64,000 nt of DNA, from positions 75,082,001 to 75,146,000 of the forward strand of contig NC_087444.1 of the NCBI RefSeq assembly GCF_036321535.1, written 5' to 3'. The notes beneath the pieces are model-generated. The model was not told the DNA's origin. It did no database searches and saw nothing but the letters and a program-made list of their open reading frames with translations. Origin of the DNA: Camelus dromedarius (lineage: Eukaryota). Of the stretch, positions 11,105 through 59,255 are shown piece by piece (positions within the stretch are counted from its first letter, which is position 1; every line of letters starts with the position of its first letter). Made by a program: the position numbers and the translations under genes.

Positions 11105-11705
11105 CACCCAGTCGGGGCTGAACTGAGTCCCCCAAAAAGACTGGTTTGAGTCTTCATCCCTGTTACCTGTGAATGTGACTTTATTTGGAAATAGGGTCTT
11201 TGTGGATGTAAATCAACTTAAGATCCGGTCATAACTGGTGTCCCAGAAGAGACCCAGAAACAGACACACGGAGAAGGCCACGTGACCACAAAGTCCGGAC
11301 TGATGCTTCTATAAGCCAAGGGTTGTCAGTAACACCGGAAGCTGGGGACGGGCAGGGAATAGCTCCTTCCTTGCAGCCCTCAGAAGGGACCAACCCTGCC
11401 GACACCTTGAGTTTTTCTCTTCTTTTTTCTTTTTTGGTTTGTTTATTATTGTTGTTTTTTAGCAACAGGATTTTTTTGGTGGGGGGAGGTAACTAGGTTT
11501 ATTTATTTATTTATTAATGGAGGCACTGGGGATTGAACCCAGGACTTGGTGCATGCTAAGCATGTGCTCTGCCACTGAGCTCTACCCTCCTTCTCCCCAC
11601 CCCCCTCTTCTGAGAACGTGATTTTGAAATTCTGGCCTCCAAAACTGGGAGACGATAGTTTCTGGTGTCTAAGCCAGCCAGCTTGTGGTCGTTTATTAGC
11701 AGGTC
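11105..11705 (+). mobile_element. MLT1 LTR interrupted by a SINE
   Basis: gaatgtgactttatttggaaatagggtctttg and ctggcctccaaaactgggagacgatagtttctggtgtctaagcc halves lie on either side of the SINE at 11470-11595. Confidence 0.75.
11470..11595 (-). mobile_element. tRNA-derived SINE of camelid type
   Basis: tRNA-like head (gctcagtggcagagc...ggttcaatcccc), (AAAT)n, acctagttacctcccc tail. The same family recurs elsewhere in the window. Confidence 0.85.
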
Positions 11706-13998: not shown

Positions 13999-18178
<4,180 letters not shown>

Positions 18179-19448
18179 GCCAGATCGGGCACCACCCCTT
18201 CCCCACAACACACACTGGATCCCAACACATCTGTTCGTCACCTGCTGCCCTGGCTTCTGTGACTTACTGTGTGCGTCGGGGGAAGGCAGGGAGGGCTGCC
18301 TGGCCTGGAAGCCACAGGCAGTTGAGTGTGTGCATGTTGTGACACACGTGCATGTACATATACGTGTGCGCTCCTGCACTGCTGTGCAGTGTTTCCACAC
18401 ACACATTTGCACATCCGTACACGCACACTGGTACCTGTTTAAGCCTGCCTGCCTGGGGAGTTGCGTGACGGTCACAGGACCCCAGGAATGCCCTCTGCAC
18501 TTCCGGGTCCTGGGGGAGCCTCTTGTTTATAGATACACAGAAGACCCAAAGAAAGTTCTAGTTGATTCCTCTACCCTACTGCTTTGAGCAGCCCTTCCCT
18601 CAGCAGACTGCTGGGATGGCTAAGGAGATGGGGACACCACTGGGGGTGCTGTCCATCTGTGCCTGGGGACCCTGGCCTCACTGGGGGATGGCTCTCCTTC
18701 CAGCTCCACACCAGAACCCAGCCAAACACCACAGCTCACACACAGGGACATGCGAGGTGTTTAATGGGTGCCTGGCACTGTCTGCCAGGGCTGTCCATCC
18801 CCACAAAGCTGGGGTTCTGGGCCCCAGCACCCCTCACCCAGGCATTTAGCAGACACTCCAGCCACACACCCAGCTAGAGGAACCGGAAGAAACAGGCTGC
18901 ACCTTCCCCAGGTGAGCAAAGGGCAAAGTTCCATTTTAAAAGAGAAAAGGCCTTGCATAAAAAAGGTCTCAAGAGAAAAGACATCACAAAGGGGGGAAAG
19001 AGCCTCCCTAAAACCCCTTCTACGCTGAAAAAGTAACAGGTTAAAATACTGCATTTAAAACAAGCCTCGAGAAAGTGTGCAAACTTCCAGGTGCTTCCAT
19101 GTCGTGGGCTTCGGGCTCTCCCACTTGGCCTGCAGTGCTCTGGGGGCCCAGGTGGCAGAGCGGTGGGTACCAACCCCCCGACACCCACTGGGCTCAAGTG
19201 TATCAGACTGAAATGTAGCAGACTCTCCCCGAATCCTGCGGCAGCTCTCGGCCAGGAGCCGTTCTTCTCCAGCTCTGGCCAGTGAGGCCCACAGGGTGGC
19301 CAGGGGCGTCCCTCAGTCCATTCAGGGGCACACAGGAGACCCTGCCGAGGCTTTGGGCCTCCCCTCCAATGTCCCTGTTCCCTGCCAGTTGGCTCGCCTG
19401 GGATTTAGCCTCCCTGCCCCGCTCCGAGAACCAGCTGGACCCTGGGGC

Positions 19449-20315
19449 CTAGTCGTGGCGCACGGGCACTGGCGGGTCCCCTCCGCTGGCCTGGTCAGAG
19501 TATGGGGGAGGCGGGGGCTGCTCCTCCTCCAGCCCGTAGGCGGCATGGCTGCGGCTGCGCTTGGCCTCTTTGATGTACAGCTCCAGGAGGACCTTGGTGG
19601 GCTGCTTGTCCACCCGCTCCCTGGGCACGCCGTGGCTCAGCAGCCAGCCCATGAGGTCCTTGCGCGTTGGGTTGGGCCCCAGCATGAGCTTGGTGCGGCC
19701 AGGTTGGCTCTGGCGCCAGAGCAGGCCAACATCGGCTATGGTCTGGATCTCCATCACCGCCTCCAGCACCGTCATGCCCTTGACCAGAAGGCTGACCAGC
19801 GAGAGCCGCAGCTCGGAGGGAGCGGCCGTCAGCAGGCGCCGCTGCAGGCCCTGCGTGAAGGGCACGTCCTCGGGCGCCGGGCGCTCAGGCTCGTTGGGCA
19901 GGGGCGGCTCTCGGTAGATCCAGTCCAGCATGCCCAGCTCGCGCACCAGCTGGATGCCCTCCTCCATGGTGGTCCAGGGCCGGAAAGGCAGCTCAGTGGC
20001 CTCGAAGTGCAGGAAGGACTCCCAGCGCTGGCGCCAGGCCTGCAGCAGCCAGGCCAGCAGCGTTCGGCAGCCACCCCGCAGGGCCTTGCAGTGGTAGTTG
20101 AAGACGGCATCACTGGTCAGGTCGCCCAGCAGCGCCAGCTCCCCGGAATTCAGGGACAGCGCTGGGCCCCCTTGGTCATACACCCGCAGGATCCAGGTGA
20201 TCATGAGCTCATTGGGGTTCTGCCTGAAGCGCCGCGCGATGGCCAGGAGCTCAGTGTACGTGTAGTAGCGGTCGCCCCGCCCCACCTGGGTGGGCGCCAG
20301 GGCTCTCTCGGCCAT
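19449..20315 (-). CDS. C19orf48: Intact 288-aa ERV-L Gag (capsid)-derived, Fv1-related ORF in the last exon of the C19orf48/SNORD88 host gene
   Basis: acagccATGG at 20315, 17 nt after acceptor cttcctgtcccccag (exon starts 20332); TAG at 19449-19451. ERV-L Gag-type motifs in order: YTYTEL, WILRVYDQGG, LTSDAVFN, LLAWLLQAWRQRW, PWTTMEEGIQLVRELGMLDWI, PEDVPFT, WLLSHGVPRERVDKQPTKVLLELY. The internal MTVLEAV matches the recalled start of the human C19orf48 ORF. Confidence 0.85.
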   Translation of the reverse strand: MAERALAPTQVGRGDRYYTYTELLAIARRFRQNPNELMITWILRVYDQGGPALSLNSGELALLGDLTSDAVFNYHCKALRGGCRTLLAWLLQAWRQRWESFLHFEATELPFRPWTTMEEGIQLVRELGMLDWIYREPPLPNEPERPAPEDVPFTQGLQRRLLTAAPSELRLSLVSLLVKGMTVLEAVMEIQTIADVGLLWRQSQPGRTKLMLGPNPTRKDLMGWLLSHGVPRERVDKQPTKVLLELYIKEAKRSRSHAAYGLEEEQPPPPPYSDQASGGDPPVPVRHD

Positions 20316-20436
20316 GGCTGTGGCTGCTCCAGCTGGGGGACAGGAAGAGGCCGGGAGGGGTGCGGCCACGGGTGCTGCAGGGAGGGCACAGAGAAATAGC
20401 CCCACACACCCGGCCACCAGGCACCTCCCTGGAGTT

Positions 20437-20524
20437 GGGCCCCACAGACCCCCGGATGTCAAGGTCCTGGGGGGCACGGTATCCTCATGGGAGATCAGAG
20501 CCCAGTGCTAGGCATCATGGGCGC
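20437..20524 (-). ncRNA. Degenerate fourth SNORD88 copy (D box CTGT)
   Basis: ATGATGCCTAGCACTGGGCTCTGATC...GGACCTTGACATCCGGGGGTCTGT in the last intron; the D box is mutated and the guide 5' end is altered. Confidence 0.75.
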
Positions 20525-20759
20525 TCTGATACTGGATGTCCCAATGCAACGCTCCCCCCACACCAGCTGCTCCTGTAGCAGCTTCCCCCCACCCCCAACA
20601 TCATGGCGTTACTGTGAAGATTAAATGAATCCAGTGCTTAGAACTGTGCCGGGTCAGTTACGTGCTCAGCATTTGCCTTTATACTATTACCATAATCTCT
20701 ACATTAAAATTTTTTTCAATTATTCTTTTTTTGAGCATTAAAAAAATATAATTTCACAT

Positions 20760-20912
20760 TAAAAAAATTTTATTTATTAAAAAATATTTCTTTGGGGAGG
20801 TGAGGTAATTAGGTGCTTTTTTTTTTTTTTTAAAAAAATGGAGGTACTGGGGATTGAACCTGGGACCCTCTGCATGCTAGGCATGCACTCTACCACTGAG
20901 CTACACCCTCCC
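20760..20912 (-). mobile_element. tRNA-derived SINE of camelid type
   Basis: gaggtactggggattgaacctggg...actctaccactgagctacaccc preceded by a T-rich tail. Confidence 0.85.
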
Positions 20913-21113
20913 CATAATCTCTACATTTTGTTAACTATAAAATAAATATGATTATTATGGCATTCATGAGAACTTCTGTTCTTACCCAGAGGAATGGTGG
21001 CGCTCTGGGACGCCTGGAGGAACCACCTGCAGAAAGGAAGGAGTTGGGGTGGGGAAGAGGAGGTTGGAGGCACACAGGGCAACCACAGCCCCCACCCATC
21101 CCTCCACAGAGCT

Positions 21114-21209
21114 GGGGGCCCCTCAGATCCCCAGGTGTCAAAGGTCCTGGGGGAGCACTGTGTCTTCACAGAAGATCAGAGCCCAGTGCTGGACATCATG
21201 GGGGTCCCC
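21114..21209 (-). ncRNA. SNORD88: Box C/D snoRNA SNORD88 family copy
   Basis: C box at 21193-21199, same guide and D' box, D box at 21123-21126, GC-rich terminal stem. Confidence 0.9.
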
Positions 21210-21609
21210 AAATATGGCCCCTTCAGGAGCCTTGACTGAACACACCTCACTGCAAAGCCCCTAACCTCCCCACCCCTGGGTTGGCCTGTTTCTAATCCTA
21301 GCCCCTCCTGCATTCACCATCTCTTACCACCCTCCCCAAACCATCTCTGCAGCAGGGATCGAACCCAGGACCTATTACCATGCATTCTGAGCTAACCCTA
21401 TAGATTTAATGAACGATAAATTTAGAATCTTGTAAGTCTAATGATTACTATGGTATTAACAAGGGGACTCTCTTCTGTTCTTACCGAGGGATGGCCAGGC
21501 TGTTCAACTCCTGAAGGAACCACCTGCAGACAGGAAAGGGTGGGGGATCCAAGAGAGGGTTGGTGGGGTGCAGGGAAACCATGGCCCCCATCCACCCTTC
21601 CCTATAGGC

Positions 21610-21705
21610 GGGACCCCTCAGAACCCCAGGTGTCAAAGGTCCCGGGGGGGGGCACCATGTCCTCACCAGAGATCAGAGCCCAGTGCTGGACATCATGGGG
21701 GTCCC
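21610..21705 (-). ncRNA. SNORD88: Box C/D snoRNA SNORD88 family copy
   Basis: C box at 21690-21696, same guide and D' box, D box at 21618-21621, 8-bp terminal stem gggacccc/ggggtccc. Confidence 0.9.
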
Positions 21706-23127
21706 AGTGCCCTTAAACTGCCTCCCTCCCCCAACCAGACCATAGAACGTTTCCATCTTGCTAGCTCTGTTGGACAGCGCTGCCTCGGAAATCGATAGAT
21801 GTTACGTGTCCCTTAGGGCTTCCCTATCCTGCTGTCTTGCTTTGCTTCTCCTTGCCCCCCTCACATATCCCTGCCCAACGGGCCCCCTCCCTAATCCACA
21901 CTTCCCCGGAAATTTCCTCAGTCCGCGATGAGGTTCAGAGCTCCGCAGAGGACGGAGAGATGAGCCCCCCGAGAAAGACACTCTGATGAGCTGCATTCTG
22001 AGCTAACCCTTCACAGCACGCAGCTCTCATCCCTAAGGTGCTTGTCGGCAGGAGTCTAAACCTCTGAGAACCTCAGAGAATACCCTTTCTGTTCTCTCTG
22101 TTATGTATTTAGAAAACAATCGTTCCCATCTGTTATCAGAAATCAACCTTATTAATGGGAATGGAGATTTGGGTCCAGACTCTATTGAGAAGTCAGGACT
22201 GTTCCACCAGAGCCATGATCCTCCTCGCTCCCCACACCCAAGGGACAGAGAAAAAGCCTCCTAGAGCTCAGAACACTTGTTTCTTTTTGGGGAACACACA
22301 TACCAACTTATCTGATGATTTAGCTCTTCGAAACACTCCTGAAACATTCTCCAGATAAACCACATCCTTTGACAATGGCTACTGTGTAAATTGAGGGTAA
22401 CCTTAATAACTGTATCAGTTTATAGAGATATGATTCATGGGGAAACTGCCTAATCTTTGCTGAAGGCGACACTGTATTCAGTCTACACCCGCTGCCGCTC
22501 CCCACTGTAAGAGTGATAATGCTTCCAGCCCTGCTGTTTCTTTTCTTCTGCTGAGTTTGAAAATTAGCTTTCTGATTAGTCCTTTTCCCTGAAACCCAAA
22601 TACATACACATTACCCTCCGTATCTACGGGGCCCCAGGAACCGATCCCCCATGGACACTGAGAAATGACCATATATATTTCCCCTTCCACAGCCCATGTA
22701 CTCCTCGCCTTATCCAACCCTCACCTGTGAAGGCAGGAAACATCACTACCCCCCACCCAACTGCACAGAGGCCTAGGGGCCCATCTGTTCCTGATGTGTT
22801 GTGCCCACTCTACAGGCAGAGTAATTGAGGCTCAGGAGAGCAATCACTTGATTAACACCTCTAAGCCCAAGAACAGCAGAGCTAGGTAAATCCCAAGCAT
22901 GACTGCTGGCATATAAATTAGGTCCCAGAGGTATCTGATGTGAAGGCACTGAAAACAAGGGTGAGTTATTTTAGATCTGGGTGGGTCAGGGAGTAGGCAT
23001 AAGGGGTCTTACCAAGATGGGGTGGTGGTGGGTGGCCCCTCAGCTTGAAGACACACCTGTAACACAGGAAGGATTTGGTGAGAGTGGGAGAGGAAACAGT
23101 TTGGGGGTCCAGAGAACATCAAAACCA

Positions 23128-23218
23128 GGGCACCTCAGATCCCCAGGTGTCAAAGGTCCTTGGGGGGCACTGTGTCCTCAGGGGTGATCAGAGCCCAGTG
23201 CTGGACATCATTGGAGCC
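23128..23218 (-). ncRNA. SNORD88C: Box C/D snoRNA SNORD88 (HBII-180) family, probably the SNORD88C orthologue
   Basis: C box ATGATG (23211), guide TCCAGCACTGGGCT followed by a CTGA D' box, CACCCCTGAGGACACAGTGC segment, D box CTGA at 23135-23138, 78 nt upstream of a 3' splice site. The guide is complementary to the 28S rRNA sequence GCCCAGUGCU. Confidence 0.9.
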
Positions 23219-24559
23219 CAGGTCCCTCTGCAACCAGATCCCAAGGCCACTCACCTTCAGGAACAGAGGCCAAGCTAACAGCACTTAGAGACTGAGAAAC
23301 ACAAAAAACCATCAGGAGGGTACAAATGCCCACAGCTTTCCCTATGGAGACACCAAGATGCCCCCACCTCCCCAGTCTCACAGGTCCACAAGGGACTGTC
23401 TCCAAACCCATTACATGTTGAGACCCTGCTCACTACTCACTACTCCTCTTGTCTCAGTTCTGCAGATTTCTAGCACTGGCTGTACCTGCTAACTCTATAC
23501 AGCGAAAGCTAAGATGCAAATCCCTTGGGAGAGCCTGTTGTGGGGGAATAAAGGGAGAAAAAGAAACCTAAAATATAAGCAGTGTAAGCAATGACCAGAG
23601 ACCCTTAAGCACAACCGTTTTTGAACAAGTCAACTGCGAAAGACGTTTTGGAGATGATTTAGGAACTATGAGCACTAAGCAGATAGAAGATGGTATCATT
23701 AAGGAACAAATCTCATTGAGGGTGACAACAGCACTGTCATTACCTAGAAAAACGTTATTTTAGAGACACAAGTATTAACTATTTTGGATGAAATAAGAAA
23801 TATACTTTCAGAACACTAAGGACAAAAAAGCAAACTTGGTGAAATGTTGTAACTATTAAACATGTCTGTTTCCCCGTATGTTTGAGGATCTGAAAAATAA
23901 AAAGGAAAAAAGGGCGTGAAAAAGGGATATATCGGACAATGGCAAAAGAGGGCGCACTCCAAAGATGAATGGACGAGAAATTCCACTTGTGACTTGGCAA
24001 GAGTAAGTGTAAACTCAACAGTTTTCTAGACGGTTGACTGAAGGGAGAAACTCAGAAGGGATTCTTGCTGGGTTGCTGTGGGGAGACAGAAAATCAGCTA
24101 TTTGCTCGTGGGCTGGCTCTCCTTGCCAGGGGCGCTGCATTGCTCAGGCGTCAAGCAACTGATGTCCAAAAAGATCTTAGGACCGATCAGCCCCAGGACT
24201 GACGTTTAATAAAACTATGAGGTTCTAAGTGATTTCAAAATTCTGATATTTGAGTGGCCGTGTGAGAATAATTCCTGAAAGTGAACAAAGGCCTCACTAG
24301 CTTTCTCCTAAAACCACTTCTATCTAGTTCTCGGAAACAACACAGTACTTAAAGACCTCACTCCCACTTCTTCCTTAGTAACTCCTGAGATCCTGCCTCT
24401 ACCTCTCCCACAGGCTTTGTTCTATGCTGCACAAAAATGCCAGCCACGTGGAATCAAAAATACAAAAGCGATTTCCTAAGGAGAGTACGTGTAGCGAGAA
24501 AGGGGGTGGAAAACTTCACAAAGAAATATTCAATGTCACTAGCCCCCTGCCTGCACCCC

Positions 24560-25460
24560 CCGCCCCCGACATGGACAAGATGGCGGAGCCCTGCGACGTG
24601 GGCAGCAGAAATGGCGTAGCCAGGCTGCGGTGCAGAGAAAGAGGAACTAGCCCTGGGGGCCTCGGTTCGCTTCGGCGGCAGGAGTCCTCCCCGACCCCCT
24701 GAGCGCCCCCAGAGAGCCCCCACCCTCTCCGGACGCCACTGCCCGCCCCGCAAGTAACACTCAGGCTAGCTGGGCCCAGACTCGGCCCACGCGACATAGT
24801 GGCCGCCCTTGCTGCAGTCCTGGGCACCACGCGACACGCACGACCCAGGTCCCAACGCACACCCCACCGCAAAACCCAGAAAAGACCCAACAGTAAAATA
24901 ATGCTCACCTCACACTCGCTCTCCCCACCGCGTGTGCAGGCTGCAGCGTGTCCTGCTTTATAGAGCGCGCCGTGCGAGCGGCCTGCCCCCCGGCGCCAGA
25001 CCGGGCTTCACACCGAGGCGTCCAGCACATACGCCGGTGTCGGAAACCCCGCTTCGGTGCTTATGGAAGGGAATACTACCTGTCTCCTCTAGAATCTTCC
25101 CGACCAGACGGTGGGATGTTGTCCCTGGGGACGGAGAAAAGGGGCAAGGAAAAACTGGGACCCGTTCTCCTGTCATGAGGGTCAGGCAATTCTGTGAACA
25201 GCACCAAAGGCGGGCCATGAAGGGGAAGGCCCCCTTCCGGGTGTGGGCGGGGCCAGAAGGGGAAGCAACTGGAATTTCCAGCACTGCAGTGGCGCGAGCT
25301 GGGCTTGCAGAGGCGGGGCAGGCCCCGGCGACGTCCCAGCCGCAGAGTGGGAGGCCGGACCCAGTACGGAGTTTGACAGGTGGGCGTTCTGGGAAAGAGT
25401 CGCGTGGCGCAGAATTAGAGGCCGAGCCTGCGCGGTGAGGGGGAGGGGCGGGACCGGAGG
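24560..25460. promoter_or_regulatory. CpG-island promoter of the snoRNA/gag host gene
   Basis: High CpG density, GC boxes, TATAAA (-) at 24957-24962, YY1-type AAGATGGCGG at 24577-24586. Confidence 0.75.
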
Positions 25461-25589: not shown

Positions 25590-25730
25590 GGTGTCTTTTC
25601 TTTTGGAGGGTAGTGGGAGGTAGTTAGGTTTATTTATTTATTTTTAGAGGAGGTACTGGGGATTGAACCCAGGATCTCATGCATGCTAAGCAGGCGCTCT
25701 ACCATTTGAGCTATACCCTACCCCCCCCCC
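25590..25730 (-). mobile_element. tRNA-derived SINE of camelid type
   Basis: Same head and (TTTA)n linker as the other copies. Confidence 0.85.
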
Positions 25731-34248: not shown

Positions 34249-34395
34249 GGGGGGTGGGGAACGGTACAGCTCAGTGGCAGAGTGCATGCCTAGCATGCAC
34301 GAGGTCCTGGGTTCAATCCCCGGTACCTCCATTAACAAATAAATAAATAAATGAACCTGATTACCCTCCCCACCAAAAAGTAAATTTAAAAAAAG
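34249..34395 (+). mobile_element. tRNA-derived SINE of camelid type between the two tetraspan genes
   Basis: gctcagtggcagagtgcatgcctagcatgcacgaggtcctgggttcaatccccggtacctcc + (AAAT)n + acctgattaccctcccc. Confidence 0.85.
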
Positions 34396-58022: not shown

Positions 58023-59255
58023 CCAGGAACGCAGTATTGCTTTTGTTTCACTATTCTCCTAGGTAGAGACAGCTCCACTGGTTTAGGTGTGGCCTTTCAT
58101 ACCGCAATAGCTCTCATCTTTAAGTCAGGGAGCTAATGTGGGGATTCTGCTAGTTTCTGAGTCTGTCTATTCCAATCATGCATTTCAGAACTGGGGAAAT
58201 AATTCTAGACTAGGTTCAAAGACATGCTGGATCCACTGTGAGACAGACCTGAGCCAAAACTCCATTGATCACCTGTCCTCCGTAAACCTCTGCTCTGACT
58301 GGCAGACCACAGTGACTTTGGGGTCTCCTGGTATTATTGTCACTTCAGATCAAGGGTCCATGGATCCTTCCAAACTCTGATTATTTCCTTTATCCCAGTA
58401 AACTGTGACCCTAGCAAAAGGTTGTAGGTCCCTTTAGGGGAAGGCTGGAAGAGAAATTAACAGCATATAATTGTTTTGGTAGCATAGTTGAGTCTGTCCT
58501 CATGGGGATTCAGCCTCCCCTTCATTCAAGGGGTTCTAGGTCTGTCAATGGACTCAAGCCTGGGAGCTGACTAGGGTGCTGTGCGTCTCTGTTTTATGAT
58601 TCAAGTCAGACTTCTGTCCATGTGTCCTACAATACTTCTGCTTATACGGGTCAACAAAGAAGTTCATTTTGCCCATCTGTTTCTCTGCTACAGGTGCCAT
58701 GATCAACTAGCCAATGCCTGAGTCTCTGTGGCCATGTGATCAGATGATTCCGGTTACTGCTTTGACTCTGACGTCTAGTGCAGCCACCACATCCACCGTG
58801 TCTTGGTGATTAGGTGCTACCACTTGGCCCCCTAACACCACAGGACCCAATCATCTCCATTGCACTTAGGTTTCCCATTCAGTGGCCTCTCTTCCTACTG
58901 TACTTTCTGACCTACAGAGAAGAGCGATCACAGAACTCTCCAAGGATGCTGGCTCCCCTTGAAAATTTATTTGCCATAATTGTGATGAAAAATGTGTCTC
59001 TGGAGCCCCCCAGCATGGGCGAGCAGGTCTCAAATATATATTCGTTGTAACATCCCATCTCCTGAAGTCTTTGGGTTTCTTCCTCCATAGTTTATCAAGA
59101 TGGTTCTACCATTTCAACTTCATCTAGTGCAGGGCCACTTTTTGATCCATATTTCAGCCAACAAAACAAATAACCAGAGACCTTCTGACCCCTCAATCTG
59201 CAAGATGAAATCCAGAATTTCTGCTTAGTGAGCCCTTATCAATAAATTCCAATCA
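58023..59255 (-). mobile_element. Decayed ERV-L internal fragment (gag-pro-start of pol)
   Basis: The minus strand reads, with stops and frameshifts, EFIDKGSLSRNSGF, LAEIWIKKWP, HWLVDHG, RVTVYWDKGNNQ, SEVTIIPGDP, YGGQVINGVLAQV and IVKQKQYCVPG, which are ERV-L/HERV-L type motifs. No LTR is evident. Confidence 0.85.

What the first reader, a model, noticed from the sequence alone, without database searches (positions are those of the whole stretch)
19449..20315. Candidate domesticated ERV-L gag (Fv1-like capsid) gene inside the SNORD88 host gene
Seen: an uninterrupted 288-codon ORF with a strong Kozak context just after a splice acceptor, fed by non-coding exons from a CpG-island promoter. Codons are heavily G/C-ending and CpG-rich (GAG CTG GCG CTG CTG GGC GAC CTG ACC), and no LTR, pro or pol is visible nearby. 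Its motifs line up in order with ERV-L Gag and with the decayed ERV-L relic at 58-59 kb (LTSDAVFN vs LSRNSGF, LLQAWRQRW vs LAEIWIKKW, WLLSHG vs WLVDHG). Established: mouse Fv1 is a restriction factor derived from ERV-L gag. Recalled: the human C19orf48 short ORF starts MTVLEAV, which is internal to this ORF, so human may keep only a broken remnant. Inference: an ancient eutherian co-opted capsid protein, intact here, possibly a capsid-binding antiviral factor or particle-forming protein.
Basis: partly seen in the sequence, partly recalled or inferred. Interest (0 to 1): 0.92.

Follow-up and report, generated by a model that had tools for sequence, protein, structure and literature searches.

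The report
Domesticated ERV-L gag in snoRNA host
The last exon of the SNORD88 snoRNA host gene (here probably in a camelid) encodes a 288-residue protein that descends from the capsid-bearing half of an ancient ERV-L-type retroviral Gag; it is a distant, separately captured cousin of the mouse antiviral gene Fv1, has been kept by purifying selection across placental mammals, and its function is unknown.

Summary
The ORF is real. It lies on the minus strand (ATG 20315, stop 19449-19451, 288 codons), directly after the last of four intronic SNORD88 copies and a conserved splice acceptor. Its C-terminal third is Pfam DUF5535 (the C19orf48 family). A profile of 32 orthologues matches genuine muroid Fv1 proteins (hhalign 99.6%, E 2e-24; BLASTP 32% identity, E 8e-24). 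It also matches the gag of an element whose pol carries a dUTPase after integrase, the ERV-L layout (29% identity, E 2e-23). Only Fv1's C-terminal domain is matched; Fv1's N-terminal coiled-coil half has no counterpart. Orthologues occur in Laurasiatheria, rodents, armadillo, tenrecs and elephant, so the capture dates to early eutherians. Pairwise dN/dS is 0.09-0.54, always below 1. An AlphaFold model is confident (pLDDT 85) and all-helical, but Foldseek found no significant match, so the capsid fold is not proven. The 'ERV-L relic' at 58-59 kb is not significantly Gag-like. An Fv1-type arms-race role is not favoured: the protein evolves slowly and lacks the multimerising domain. RefSeq already names orthologues 'Fv1-like'; I found no paper describing the gene.

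The parts
19449..20315 (-). Coding sequence, 288 codons plus stop; the C19orf48/DUF5535-family orthologue, derived from an ERV-L-type gag
19986..20273 (-). Residues 15-110: N-terminal helical lobe (six helices in the model). It aligns to Fv1's C-terminal domain and to Gag-like proteins, and includes the near-invariant W-I-L-R-V-Y-D block (residues 41-47)
19707..19985 (-). Residues 111-203: second helical lobe. It holds the most conserved block of the whole family (W114 invariant, R125 at least 90% over 78 sequences; residues 120-135 at 19911-19958), which resembles a major-homology-region motif
19536..19706 (-). Residues 204-260: third small helical module. It is shared with longer Gag-like proteins but not with Fv1, and it lies within Pfam DUF5535 (residues 181-283)
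19500..19511 (-). PPPY (PPxY) motif in the disordered tail, residues 269-272; present in 30 of 37 orthologue tails
20316..20374 (-). 5' untranslated part of the terminal exon, 59 nt with no ATG. The conserved acceptor CAG lies at 20375-20377; a second possible acceptor lies 17 nt before the ATG
20437..20526 (-). SNORD88 copy 4 (last intron), 62 nt upstream of the conserved acceptor
   Evidence: 82.9 bits; gathering score 46
21116..21207 (-). SNORD88 copy 3
   Evidence: 99.2 bits
21611..21704 (-). SNORD88 copy 2
   Evidence: 99.3 bits
23128..23219 (-). SNORD88 copy 1
   Evidence: 100 bits
20989..21049 (-). Repeated unit just downstream of SNORD88 copy 3; a probable short non-coding exon with its acceptor (inferred)
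21486..21546 (-). Repeated unit just downstream of SNORD88 copy 2; a probable short non-coding exon (inferred)
24400..25400 (-). CpG island, the probable promoter and first exon of the host gene (approximate bounds); conserved with a bat contig

Best explanation
WHAT IT IS (shown). This is a host gene made from the C-terminal ~55% of an ERV-L-type (class III, spuma-like) retroviral Gag. It was captured in an early eutherian and has no LTR, pro or pol left. It now forms the terminal coding exon of the SNORD88 snoRNA host gene, so one transcription unit yields four box C/D snoRNAs from its introns and, after splicing, an mRNA whose first AUG opens the 288-codon ORF. It is the intact counterpart of the C19orf48/DUF5535 family. 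It is a paralogue-like cousin of Fv1, not its orthologue.

HOW IT MOST LIKELY WORKS (inferred, about 0.35-0.4). It is a slowly evolving Gag-type interaction module serving a conserved host role rather than an arms race. Two helical lobes inherited from the capsid region, including the family's most conserved MHR-like block, would mediate self-association or Gag-type association. The disordered tail keeps a PPxY motif, the classic ligand of WW domains of NEDD4-type ligases and a retroviral late-domain type. The protein would therefore act as an adaptor or scaffold linked to ubiquitin-ligase or budding machinery. It appears dispensable in several lineages where it has decayed.
For: ORF, start context and acceptor. 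SNORD88 copies lie upstream in the window and in four other genomic contigs. Two mRNA-like contigs lack the snoRNA, and the longer one has a 223-nt 5' UTR without any ATG. Pfam DUF5535 matches at 181 bits.

Homology to named Fv1. Homology to a gag that is followed by a pol with dUTPase C-terminal to integrase. That layout, and a Gag without zinc fingers, are ERV-L traits according to PMC1224870. None of 78 family members has a CCHC knuckle. There is no pol or LTR in the window.

Orthologues occur in Laurasiatheria, Rodentia, Xenarthra and Afrotheria. dN/dS is 0.09-0.23 for four taxa and 0.44-0.54 for three others. All bootstrap upper bounds are below 0.8 and every domain is constrained. Identity is 85-92% across mammalian orders, against 60-65% among murid Fv1 C-terminal domains. 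PPxY is kept in 30 of 37 tails. The model is confident and all-helical.
Against: No structure search gave a significant capsid match. The best-TM hits were retroviral (MLV capsid 6hwx_A, and a toad ERV Gag) but had E about 1-2. No direct evidence of translation was obtained here. Tenrecs and some bats lack the PPxY motif although the ORF is kept. The mechanism rests on motif and conservation logic only. Apparent decay in cetaceans, vespertilionid bats, perissodactyls and a tamarin would also fit a defence gene that is lost when its target disappears.
Confidence: 0.7

Rival explanations
1. Fv1-type restriction factor: the protein binds the capsid lattice of incoming retroviral cores and blocks infection after entry.
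For: It is homologous to exactly the Fv1 domain that carries the specificity determinants and contacts capsid (PMC7313476). Its patchy retention and apparent decay in several lineages is typical of immunity genes.
Against: It has no counterpart of Fv1's N-terminal coiled-coil half, which PMC7313476 says mediates the multimerisation needed for lattice binding. It shows strong purifying selection and 85-92% identity across orders, instead of the rapid divergence seen among Fv1s. No antiviral data exist.
Confidence: 0.15
2. Dominant-negative Gag: an N-terminally truncated Gag that co-assembles with Gag of ERV-L-type elements and poisons their particle formation, in the manner of Ty1 p22 or sheep enJS56A1. 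This would restrain the element family that gave rise to it.
For: It retains the conserved association block and the C-terminal Gag modules but lacks the N-terminal half. A conserved self-interface as target would explain purifying rather than positive selection. According to the title of the Benit et al. 1999 reference listed in PMC1224870, ERV-L elements have been active throughout mammalian evolution.
Against: There is no evidence on expression timing or on interaction. Decay in lineages that still carry class III elements was not examined. The truncated-Gag analogy (PMC8458377, seen; abstract only) is by resemblance alone.
Confidence: 0.2
3. No protein function: the locus matters only as a snoRNA host, and the ORF is a fortuitous or decaying remnant, as is suspected for human C19orf48.
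For: Human C19orf48 is listed among potential non-coding genes (PMC6101605) and is called C19orf48P (PMC12141712). GC-rich sequence produces long spurious ORFs; the 367-codon antisense ORF is an example.
Against: The sense frame is open in all 7 CDSs compared and in about 30 named species. The start codon is shared from camelid to armadillo and tenrec. dN/dS is significantly below 1 in every domain. The antisense frame is interrupted in 5 of 7.
Confidence: 0.05

Closest known systems
Fv1 (Friend virus susceptibility 1, muroid rodents)
   Same: Both are host genes made from an ERV-L-type gag with the rest of the provirus lost. There is significant homology over about 180 residues covering Fv1's C-terminal, capsid-binding domain and the conserved MHR-like block.
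   Different: This gene sits at a different locus, the SNORD88 host gene, and is eutherian-wide rather than muroid (PMC8922424). It has no N-terminal coiled-coil half. It keeps about 90 further C-terminal Gag residues plus PPxY that Fv1 lacks. It is under purifying, not diversifying, selection.
Gag of ERV-L-type (class III, spuma-like) endogenous retroviruses such as MuERV-L and HERV-L
   Same: It is collinear with residues ~226-474 of a 521-residue gag whose pol has dUTPase after integrase. It has no zinc knuckle (PMC1224870).
   Different: It lacks the N-terminal ~45% of Gag and has no LTR, pro or pol. It is spliced onto non-coding exons of a host gene and is conserved as a single-copy orthologue. 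MuERV-L and HERV-L Gag themselves did not come back as named hits, so the direct comparison was not made.
C19orf48 / Pfam DUF5535
   Same: It matches the Pfam model far above threshold and has the same SNORD88-host context.
   Different: The Pfam model covers only residues 181-283 and begins at an internal Met. The 180 residues upstream, which carry the Fv1/Gag homology, are outside the family definition, and the family is labelled 'unknown function'.
gagV1/ERVFRD-2 and other co-opted retroviral gag genes of primates
   Same: These are also retroviral gag ORFs kept under purifying selection as host genes (PMC12679747).
   Different: They derive from a different retroviral class, are at least 43 My old and simian-only, and are placenta-specific. 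The present gene is roughly twice as old and is shared by all eutherian superorders sampled.
Domesticated Metaviridae capsid genes (ARC, PEG10, RTL, PNMA)
   Same: They are eutherian-age, capsid-derived genes retained under purifying selection (PMC11011659), which is the same evolutionary regime as seen here.
   Different: Their origin is Ty3/metaviral, not retroviral. Neither sequence nor fold search linked them to this protein.

Membership tests
ERV-L-type (class III) Gag-derived proteins | Significant sequence homology to the gag of an element with ERV-L organisation (pol with dUTPase C-terminal to integrase) | tested here: met
   P0088 gag aligns with ORF residues 10-247 at 29% identity, E 2e-23. 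The adjacent pol has the order RVT_1, RNase_H, rve, dUTPase. The trait is defined in PMC1224870.
ERV-L-type (class III) Gag-derived proteins | Gag without Cys-His zinc knuckles | tested here: met
   0 of 78 family members, including the ORF, carry CX2CX4HX4C. PMC1224870 states that HERV-L Gag has none.
ERV-L-type (class III) Gag-derived proteins | Retroviral capsid fold (helical N- and C-terminal domains) | tested here: inconclusive
   The model has pLDDT 85 and is all-helical. Foldseek found nothing at E <= 0.001. The highest-TM hits were the MLV capsid hexamer (E 1.9) and a toad ERV Gag (E 0.96, probability 0.47). No PDB sequence hit was found.
ERV-L-type (class III) Gag-derived proteins | Major homology region (canonical Q-x3-E-x7-R spacing, from my own knowledge) | tested here: inconclusive
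   The most conserved family block (residues 114-135) has Q122, E126 and R135, i.e. Q-x3-E-x8-R, one residue longer than canonical. It aligns with the equally conserved block of Fv1.
ERV-L-type (class III) Gag-derived proteins | tRNA-Leu primer binding site and LTRs of the source element | tested here: not met
   No LTR-like repeats and no pol were found around the ORF, as expected after domestication. The PBS of the relatives was not examined.
Fv1 | Homology to the Fv1 C-terminal (capsid-binding) domain | tested here: met
   hhalign 99.6%, E 2e-24, 178 columns; ORF 14-197 aligns with Fv1 248-428 of 460. BLASTP E 8e-24.
Fv1 | N-terminal coiled-coil multimerisation domain | tested here: not met
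   Nothing in the ORF aligns to Fv1 residues 1-247. The ORF starts 13 residues before the homology begins. The domain's role is described in PMC7313476.
Fv1 | Orthology: muroid-restricted gene at the Fv1 locus | tested here: not met
   The family occurs in Laurasiatheria, Xenarthra and Afrotheria and sits in the SNORD88 host gene. A search with Fv1 returned only muroid Fv1/Fv7. The origin of Fv1 in Muroidea about 45 My ago is from PMC8922424.
Fv1 | Rapid, positively selected evolution | tested here: not met
   Whole-gene and per-domain pairwise dN/dS is 0.09-0.54. Site-level tests were not run.
Fv1 | Restriction of retroviral infection | not testable with these tools
   No functional data exist, and the experiment is outside what this report may propose.
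C19orf48 / DUF5535 | Pfam PF17687 above the gathering score | tested here: met
   181.1 bits against a cut-off of 25; residues 181-283 align to profile positions 1-103 of 105.
C19orf48 / DUF5535 | Host gene of the SNORD88 snoRNAs | tested here: met
   Four SNORD88 copies lie upstream on the same strand, with the same arrangement in four other genomic contigs. The human parental gene of SNORD88B is C19orf48P (PMC12141712).
Particle-forming domesticated capsid genes (ARC/PEG10 type) | Metaviral (Ty3-like) capsid ancestry | tested here: not met
   No Pfam Gag, retrotransposon-gag or PNMA family matched any of 78 members. The homology found is to retroviral-type gag.
Particle-forming domesticated capsid genes (ARC/PEG10 type) | Self-assembly into capsid-like shells | not testable with these tools
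   Not addressed here.

The most novel reading that the evidence does not exclude
This would be the oldest co-opted Retroviridae gag gene known in mammals, about 100 My old and present in all eutherian superorders, roughly twice the age of Fv1 or gagV1. It would act as a conserved inhibitor of Gag assembly by its own source family (ERV-L/MaLR-type elements), produced from a bifunctional snoRNA-host transcript. Its repeated loss, for example in anthropoid primates, would have removed a brake on class III element activity.
Probability: 0.15. Interest if true: 0.85.

Novelty: new member of a known kind. Interest (0 to 1): 0.6.

Why it matters
Four points make this worth attention.

1. It turns a 'domain of unknown function' and a gene whose coding status in human is doubted (C19orf48/C19orf48P) into the remnant of a full-length, well conserved, retrovirus-derived gene that is intact in most non-primate mammals.
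2. It adds a second, much older and independently captured ERV-L-type gag to the single textbook case, Fv1. Unlike Fv1, it evolves under purifying selection.
3. It gives a rare example of a snoRNA host gene whose spliced RNA also encodes a conserved protein.
4. It offers a natural comparison (with versus without the coiled-coil half; arms race versus conservation) for asking what a captured capsid domain can be used for.

The similarity is already reflected in automatic RefSeq and UniProt names ('Friend virus susceptibility protein 1-like'). The news is therefore the characterisation and the dating, not the bare resemblance.

Tried and rejected
**Structure and sequence searches that found nothing**
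- PDB sequence searches with the ORF, the orthologue profile and the deep family profile found nothing relevant.
- Foldseek with a weak first model (pLDDT 63) and then with a good model (pLDDT 85), against PDB and BFVD, gave no significant hit.
- Pfam has no model for this Gag family: none of 78 members hits any Gag family.

**The relic at 58-59 kb**
- It was tested with tblastn of the ORF, tblastn of 39 Gag-like proteins, two profiles and an ERV-L-type pol. Nothing was significant.

**Alternative readings of the ORF**
- The 342-codon GTG-start version (19449-20477) is rejected because it runs through the intron and into SNORD88 copy 4.
- The 367-codon plus-strand ORF is rejected because it is interrupted in 5 of 7 orthologues.
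- The N-terminally extended RefSeq isoforms (up to 400 aa) are rejected as coding because their extensions are not conserved.

**Data I could not obtain**
- A search with Fv1's C-terminal domain returned only Fv1/Fv7, so no named MuERV-L or HERV-L Gag was obtained.
- A search with the C-terminal 108 residues returned no named human, mouse or rat protein, so their status was not established.
- The ten longest other ORFs in the window have no Pfam hit, so the flanking genes (the ACP4-KLK1 synteny claim) were not verified.
- Wang & Han 2020, Young et al. 2018 and Benit et al. 1997 are not held. I therefore cannot exclude that this co-option is already listed in Wang & Han's catalogue of 177 events.
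- Searches for C19orf48 with gag or endogenous retrovirus, C19orf48P and DUF5535 found no paper that makes the link.
Full report
**1. Observation**

The ORF exists but lies on the minus strand: ATG at 20315, TAG at 19449-19451, 288 codons. GC3 is 0.90, overall GC 0.68 and CpG o/e 0.60.

A longer GTG-start reading (342 codons, to 20477) runs through intronic sequence and into a snoRNA, so it is not credible. A 367-codon ORF on the plus strand overlaps the gene. It is open across the CDS only in the window and in one other GC3-rich orthologue, and is interrupted in five others, whereas the sense frame is open in all seven. It is a by-product of the G/C-ending codons.

**2. Anatomy of the locus**

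Rfam finds four SNORD88 copies on the same strand, all upstream of the ORF in its own orientation: 23128-23219, 21611-21704, 21116-21207 and 20437-20526. The only direct-repeat families within 14-27 kb are these snoRNAs and a 61-nt unit just downstream of two of them. These units look like the short internal exons of the host gene. There are no LTR-like repeats.

A CpG island lies at about 24.4-25.4 kb (GC 0.62-0.65, o/e 0.68-0.75) upstream of the first snoRNA and is conserved with a bat contig.

An alignment of the segment between the last snoRNA and the ATG in five species shows an invariant CAG after a pyrimidine tract at window 20375-20377. This is 62 nt after the snoRNA and 59 nt before the ATG, with no ATG in between. 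Either way, the coding sequence is the terminal exon, so its stop codon is in the last exon.

Four genomic contigs from other mammals (L002-L005) carry SNORD88 just upstream of their ORF. Two contigs (L001, L006) lack it. L001 has a 223-nt leader without any ATG, which is what a spliced mRNA would look like. That these two contigs derive from RNA is my inference.

**3. What the protein is**

Pfam places residues 181-283 in DUF5535 (181 bits against a cut-off of 25), with profile position 1 on the internal Met at residue 181. The first 180 residues have no Pfam family.

A search of 5.8 billion proteins gave 57 relatives. The orthologues are 50-92% identical and come from camel (96% in the alignment, so the window is probably camelid), carnivores, ruminants, hippo, many bats, marmot, beaver, jerboa, mole rat, armadillo, tenrecs and elephant. 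RefSeq and UniProt name many of them 'Friend virus susceptibility protein 1-like'.

A profile of 32 orthologues searched against 1.84 billion representatives gave 285 hits at E <= 1e-3. Many are 400-600-residue proteins that match in their C-terminal halves. One of these is a named Fv1 restriction factor from Lophuromys (E 4.6e-21). The comparisons are:
- Pairwise BLASTP of the ORF against that Fv1: 32% identity over 180 residues, E 8e-24.
- Profile-profile comparison with 16 genuine Fv1/Fv7 proteins: 99.6% probability, E 2e-24, ORF 14-197 aligned to Fv1 248-428 of 460.
- Another relative, P0088, is a 521-residue gag on a 6.5-kb contig. It is followed by a 1129-residue pol with RVT_1, RNase H, integrase and then a dUTPase. 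It aligns to ORF residues 10-247 (29% identity, E 2e-23).

A dUTPase C-terminal to integrase and a Gag without zinc fingers are the traits that PMC1224870 gives for MuERV-L/HERV-L. None of the 78 family members has a CCHC knuckle.

The ORF is therefore the C-terminal ~55% of an ERV-L-type Gag. The part it shares with Fv1 is Fv1's C-terminal domain, which carries the specificity determinants. Fv1's N-terminal coiled-coil, which mediates multimerisation (PMC7313476), has no counterpart. Conversely, ORF residues ~198-260 match longer Gag-like proteins but not Fv1.

**4. Structure**

With orthologues only, AlphaFold gave pLDDT 63. With a 78-sequence alignment that includes Fv1s and Gag-like proteins it gave pLDDT 85 and pTM 0.67, with values above 90 for residues 20-195. 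The model has these elements:
- six helices at residues 20-108;
- a long helix on the most conserved block (117-133), followed by three more helices up to residue 203;
- a small helical module at 218-260;
- a disordered tail holding PPPY at 269-272.

Foldseek against PDB and BFVD found nothing at E <= 0.001. The hits with the highest TM-scores were retroviral: the MLV capsid hexamer 6hwx_A (TM 0.25/0.30, E 1.9) and a Rhinella marina ERV Gag (TMq 0.37, probability 0.47, E 0.96). That is suggestive only. I count the capsid fold as untested rather than shown. No member of the family, Fv1 included, has a solved structure detectable by sequence.

**5. Selection and distribution**

Nei-Gojobori dN/dS on seven CDSs is 0.09-0.23 among the window, two rodent-like mRNA contigs and a ruminant-like contig. 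It is 0.44-0.54 against a phyllostomid-like bat, another bat-like contig and a cetartiodactyl contig. All bootstrap upper limits are below 0.8, and all four regions of the protein are constrained.

The start codon position is shared from camelid to armadillo and tenrec. Across orders the protein is 85-92% identical, whereas Fv1 C-terminal domains of murids are only 60-65% identical to each other. This gene is therefore not in an Fv1-style arms race.

Signs of decay appear in several lineages:
- low identity or partial coverage in cetaceans and vespertilionid bats;
- 'low quality' or split gene models in donkey, rhinoceros and porcupine;
- a tamarin model at 47% identity in which family-invariant residues are replaced.

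The human host gene is called C19orf48P (PMC12141712), and its coding status was questioned in PMC6101605. I could not examine human or mouse sequence directly. Bovine C18H19orf48 is expressed in endometrium (PMC7381276).

**6. The relic at 58-59 kb**

I found no significant similarity there to the ORF, to 39 Gag-like proteins, to two family profiles or to an ERV-L-type pol. The two best non-self profile hits in the whole window do fall there on the minus strand (E 0.59 and 1.4), so a very eroded gag relic is possible but unproven.

**7. Mechanism**

Shown: origin, gene structure, conservation and domain content. Inferred: function.

I consider the most likely function (about 0.35-0.4) to be a conserved host role as a Gag-type interaction module. 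Lobes inherited from the capsid region would associate with like partners, and a PPxY tail (kept in 30 of 37 orthologues) would engage WW-domain ligases of the NEDD4 type. That PPxY motifs do this, including as retroviral late domains, is established knowledge. The evolutionary regime matches that of domesticated metaviral capsid genes (PMC11011659).

The rivals are:
- a dominant-negative inhibitor of ERV-L-type Gag assembly (0.2);
- Fv1-type restriction of incoming cores (0.15), weakened by the missing coiled-coil and the slow evolution;
- no protein function (0.05), contradicted by the conservation.

**8. Novelty**

The kind is known: Fv1, gagV1 and others. The Fv1-likeness of this family is already embedded in automatic database names. 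I found no paper that links C19orf48, DUF5535 or the SNORD88 host gene to a retroviral gag. I could not read Wang & Han 2020, which catalogues 177 co-options.

If the gene is undescribed, it is the oldest co-opted Retroviridae gag in mammals. [quoted passage not shown]

**9. Limits and slips**

The NJ tree is not rooted on known ERV-L Gag sequences and does not resolve the relation to Fv1. Separate capture rests on locus and distribution. Species of the Logan and ENA contigs are unknown.

- Early in my reasoning I began to recall the human C19orf48 protein from memory. I stopped and used it nowhere.
- The script printed the bounds of stop-to-stop pieces, some of them inside the putative relic.
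- Profile HMMs were built in scratch for searching only.

Noticed in passing
window 19296-20399 (+): A 367-codon antisense ORF overlaps the gene. It is open across the CDS only in the window and one other GC3-rich orthologue and is interrupted in five others, so it is a by-product of G/C-ending codons.
   Followed up: yes
L007:1181-6256: An ENA contig of unknown host carries an apparently intact gag (P0088) and a 1129-residue pol with dUTPase after integrase, the ERV-L-type layout. It was used only as a comparator.
   Followed up: partly
L008; proteins P0114, P0199, P0202: Gag-like ORFs of this family sit on short contigs of 'Klebsiella pneumoniae' assemblies. This is almost certainly eukaryotic (bird-like, by the tree) contamination of bacterial genome records.
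   Followed up: no
proteins P0133, P0210-P0212 (chicken): RefSeq 'synoviolin isoform' models contain a stretch of this Gag family between the RING and TPR parts. They are probably chimeric gene models that run through an ERV.
   Followed up: no
proteins P0082, P0198 (koala): A 548/634-residue full-length Gag-like ORF, named 'WW domain-containing adapter with coiled-coil-like', is the nearest non-eutherian relative in the tree. It could be a young class III element or a separate marsupial co-option.
   Followed up: no
window 11518-11589 (-), 20839-20910 (-), 25652-25717 (-), 34263-34327 (+): These tRNA-model hits (32-46 bits) are probably tRNA-derived SINEs. One lies in the intron between SNORD88 copies 3 and 4. 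AATAAA is about five times over-represented in the window (60 against 12.9 expected), in line with A-rich SINE tails.
   Followed up: no
window 14150-15850: This stretch is 83-86% identical to a cetartiodactyl contig (L004), more conserved than its flanks and GC-rich. Its long minus-strand ORFs have no Pfam hit. It may be exons or a promoter of the neighbouring gene.
   Followed up: partly
window 58650-59110 (-): The weakest-but-best non-self matches to the Gag family profiles cluster here (E 0.59-9). This may be a very eroded gag relic, or chance. No pol relic lies beside it.
   Followed up: partly
protein P0001 (Camelus ferus): The wild camel gene model is 96% identical to the window ORF but carries a 16-residue duplicated insertion and a long non-conserved N-terminal extension. 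These look like annotation or assembly artefacts.
   Followed up: no
window 20437-23219 (-): There are four SNORD88 copies here. The copy nearest the ORF scores lower (82.9 bits against about 99-100 for the others) and is only 65% identical to the reference copy.
   Followed up: no
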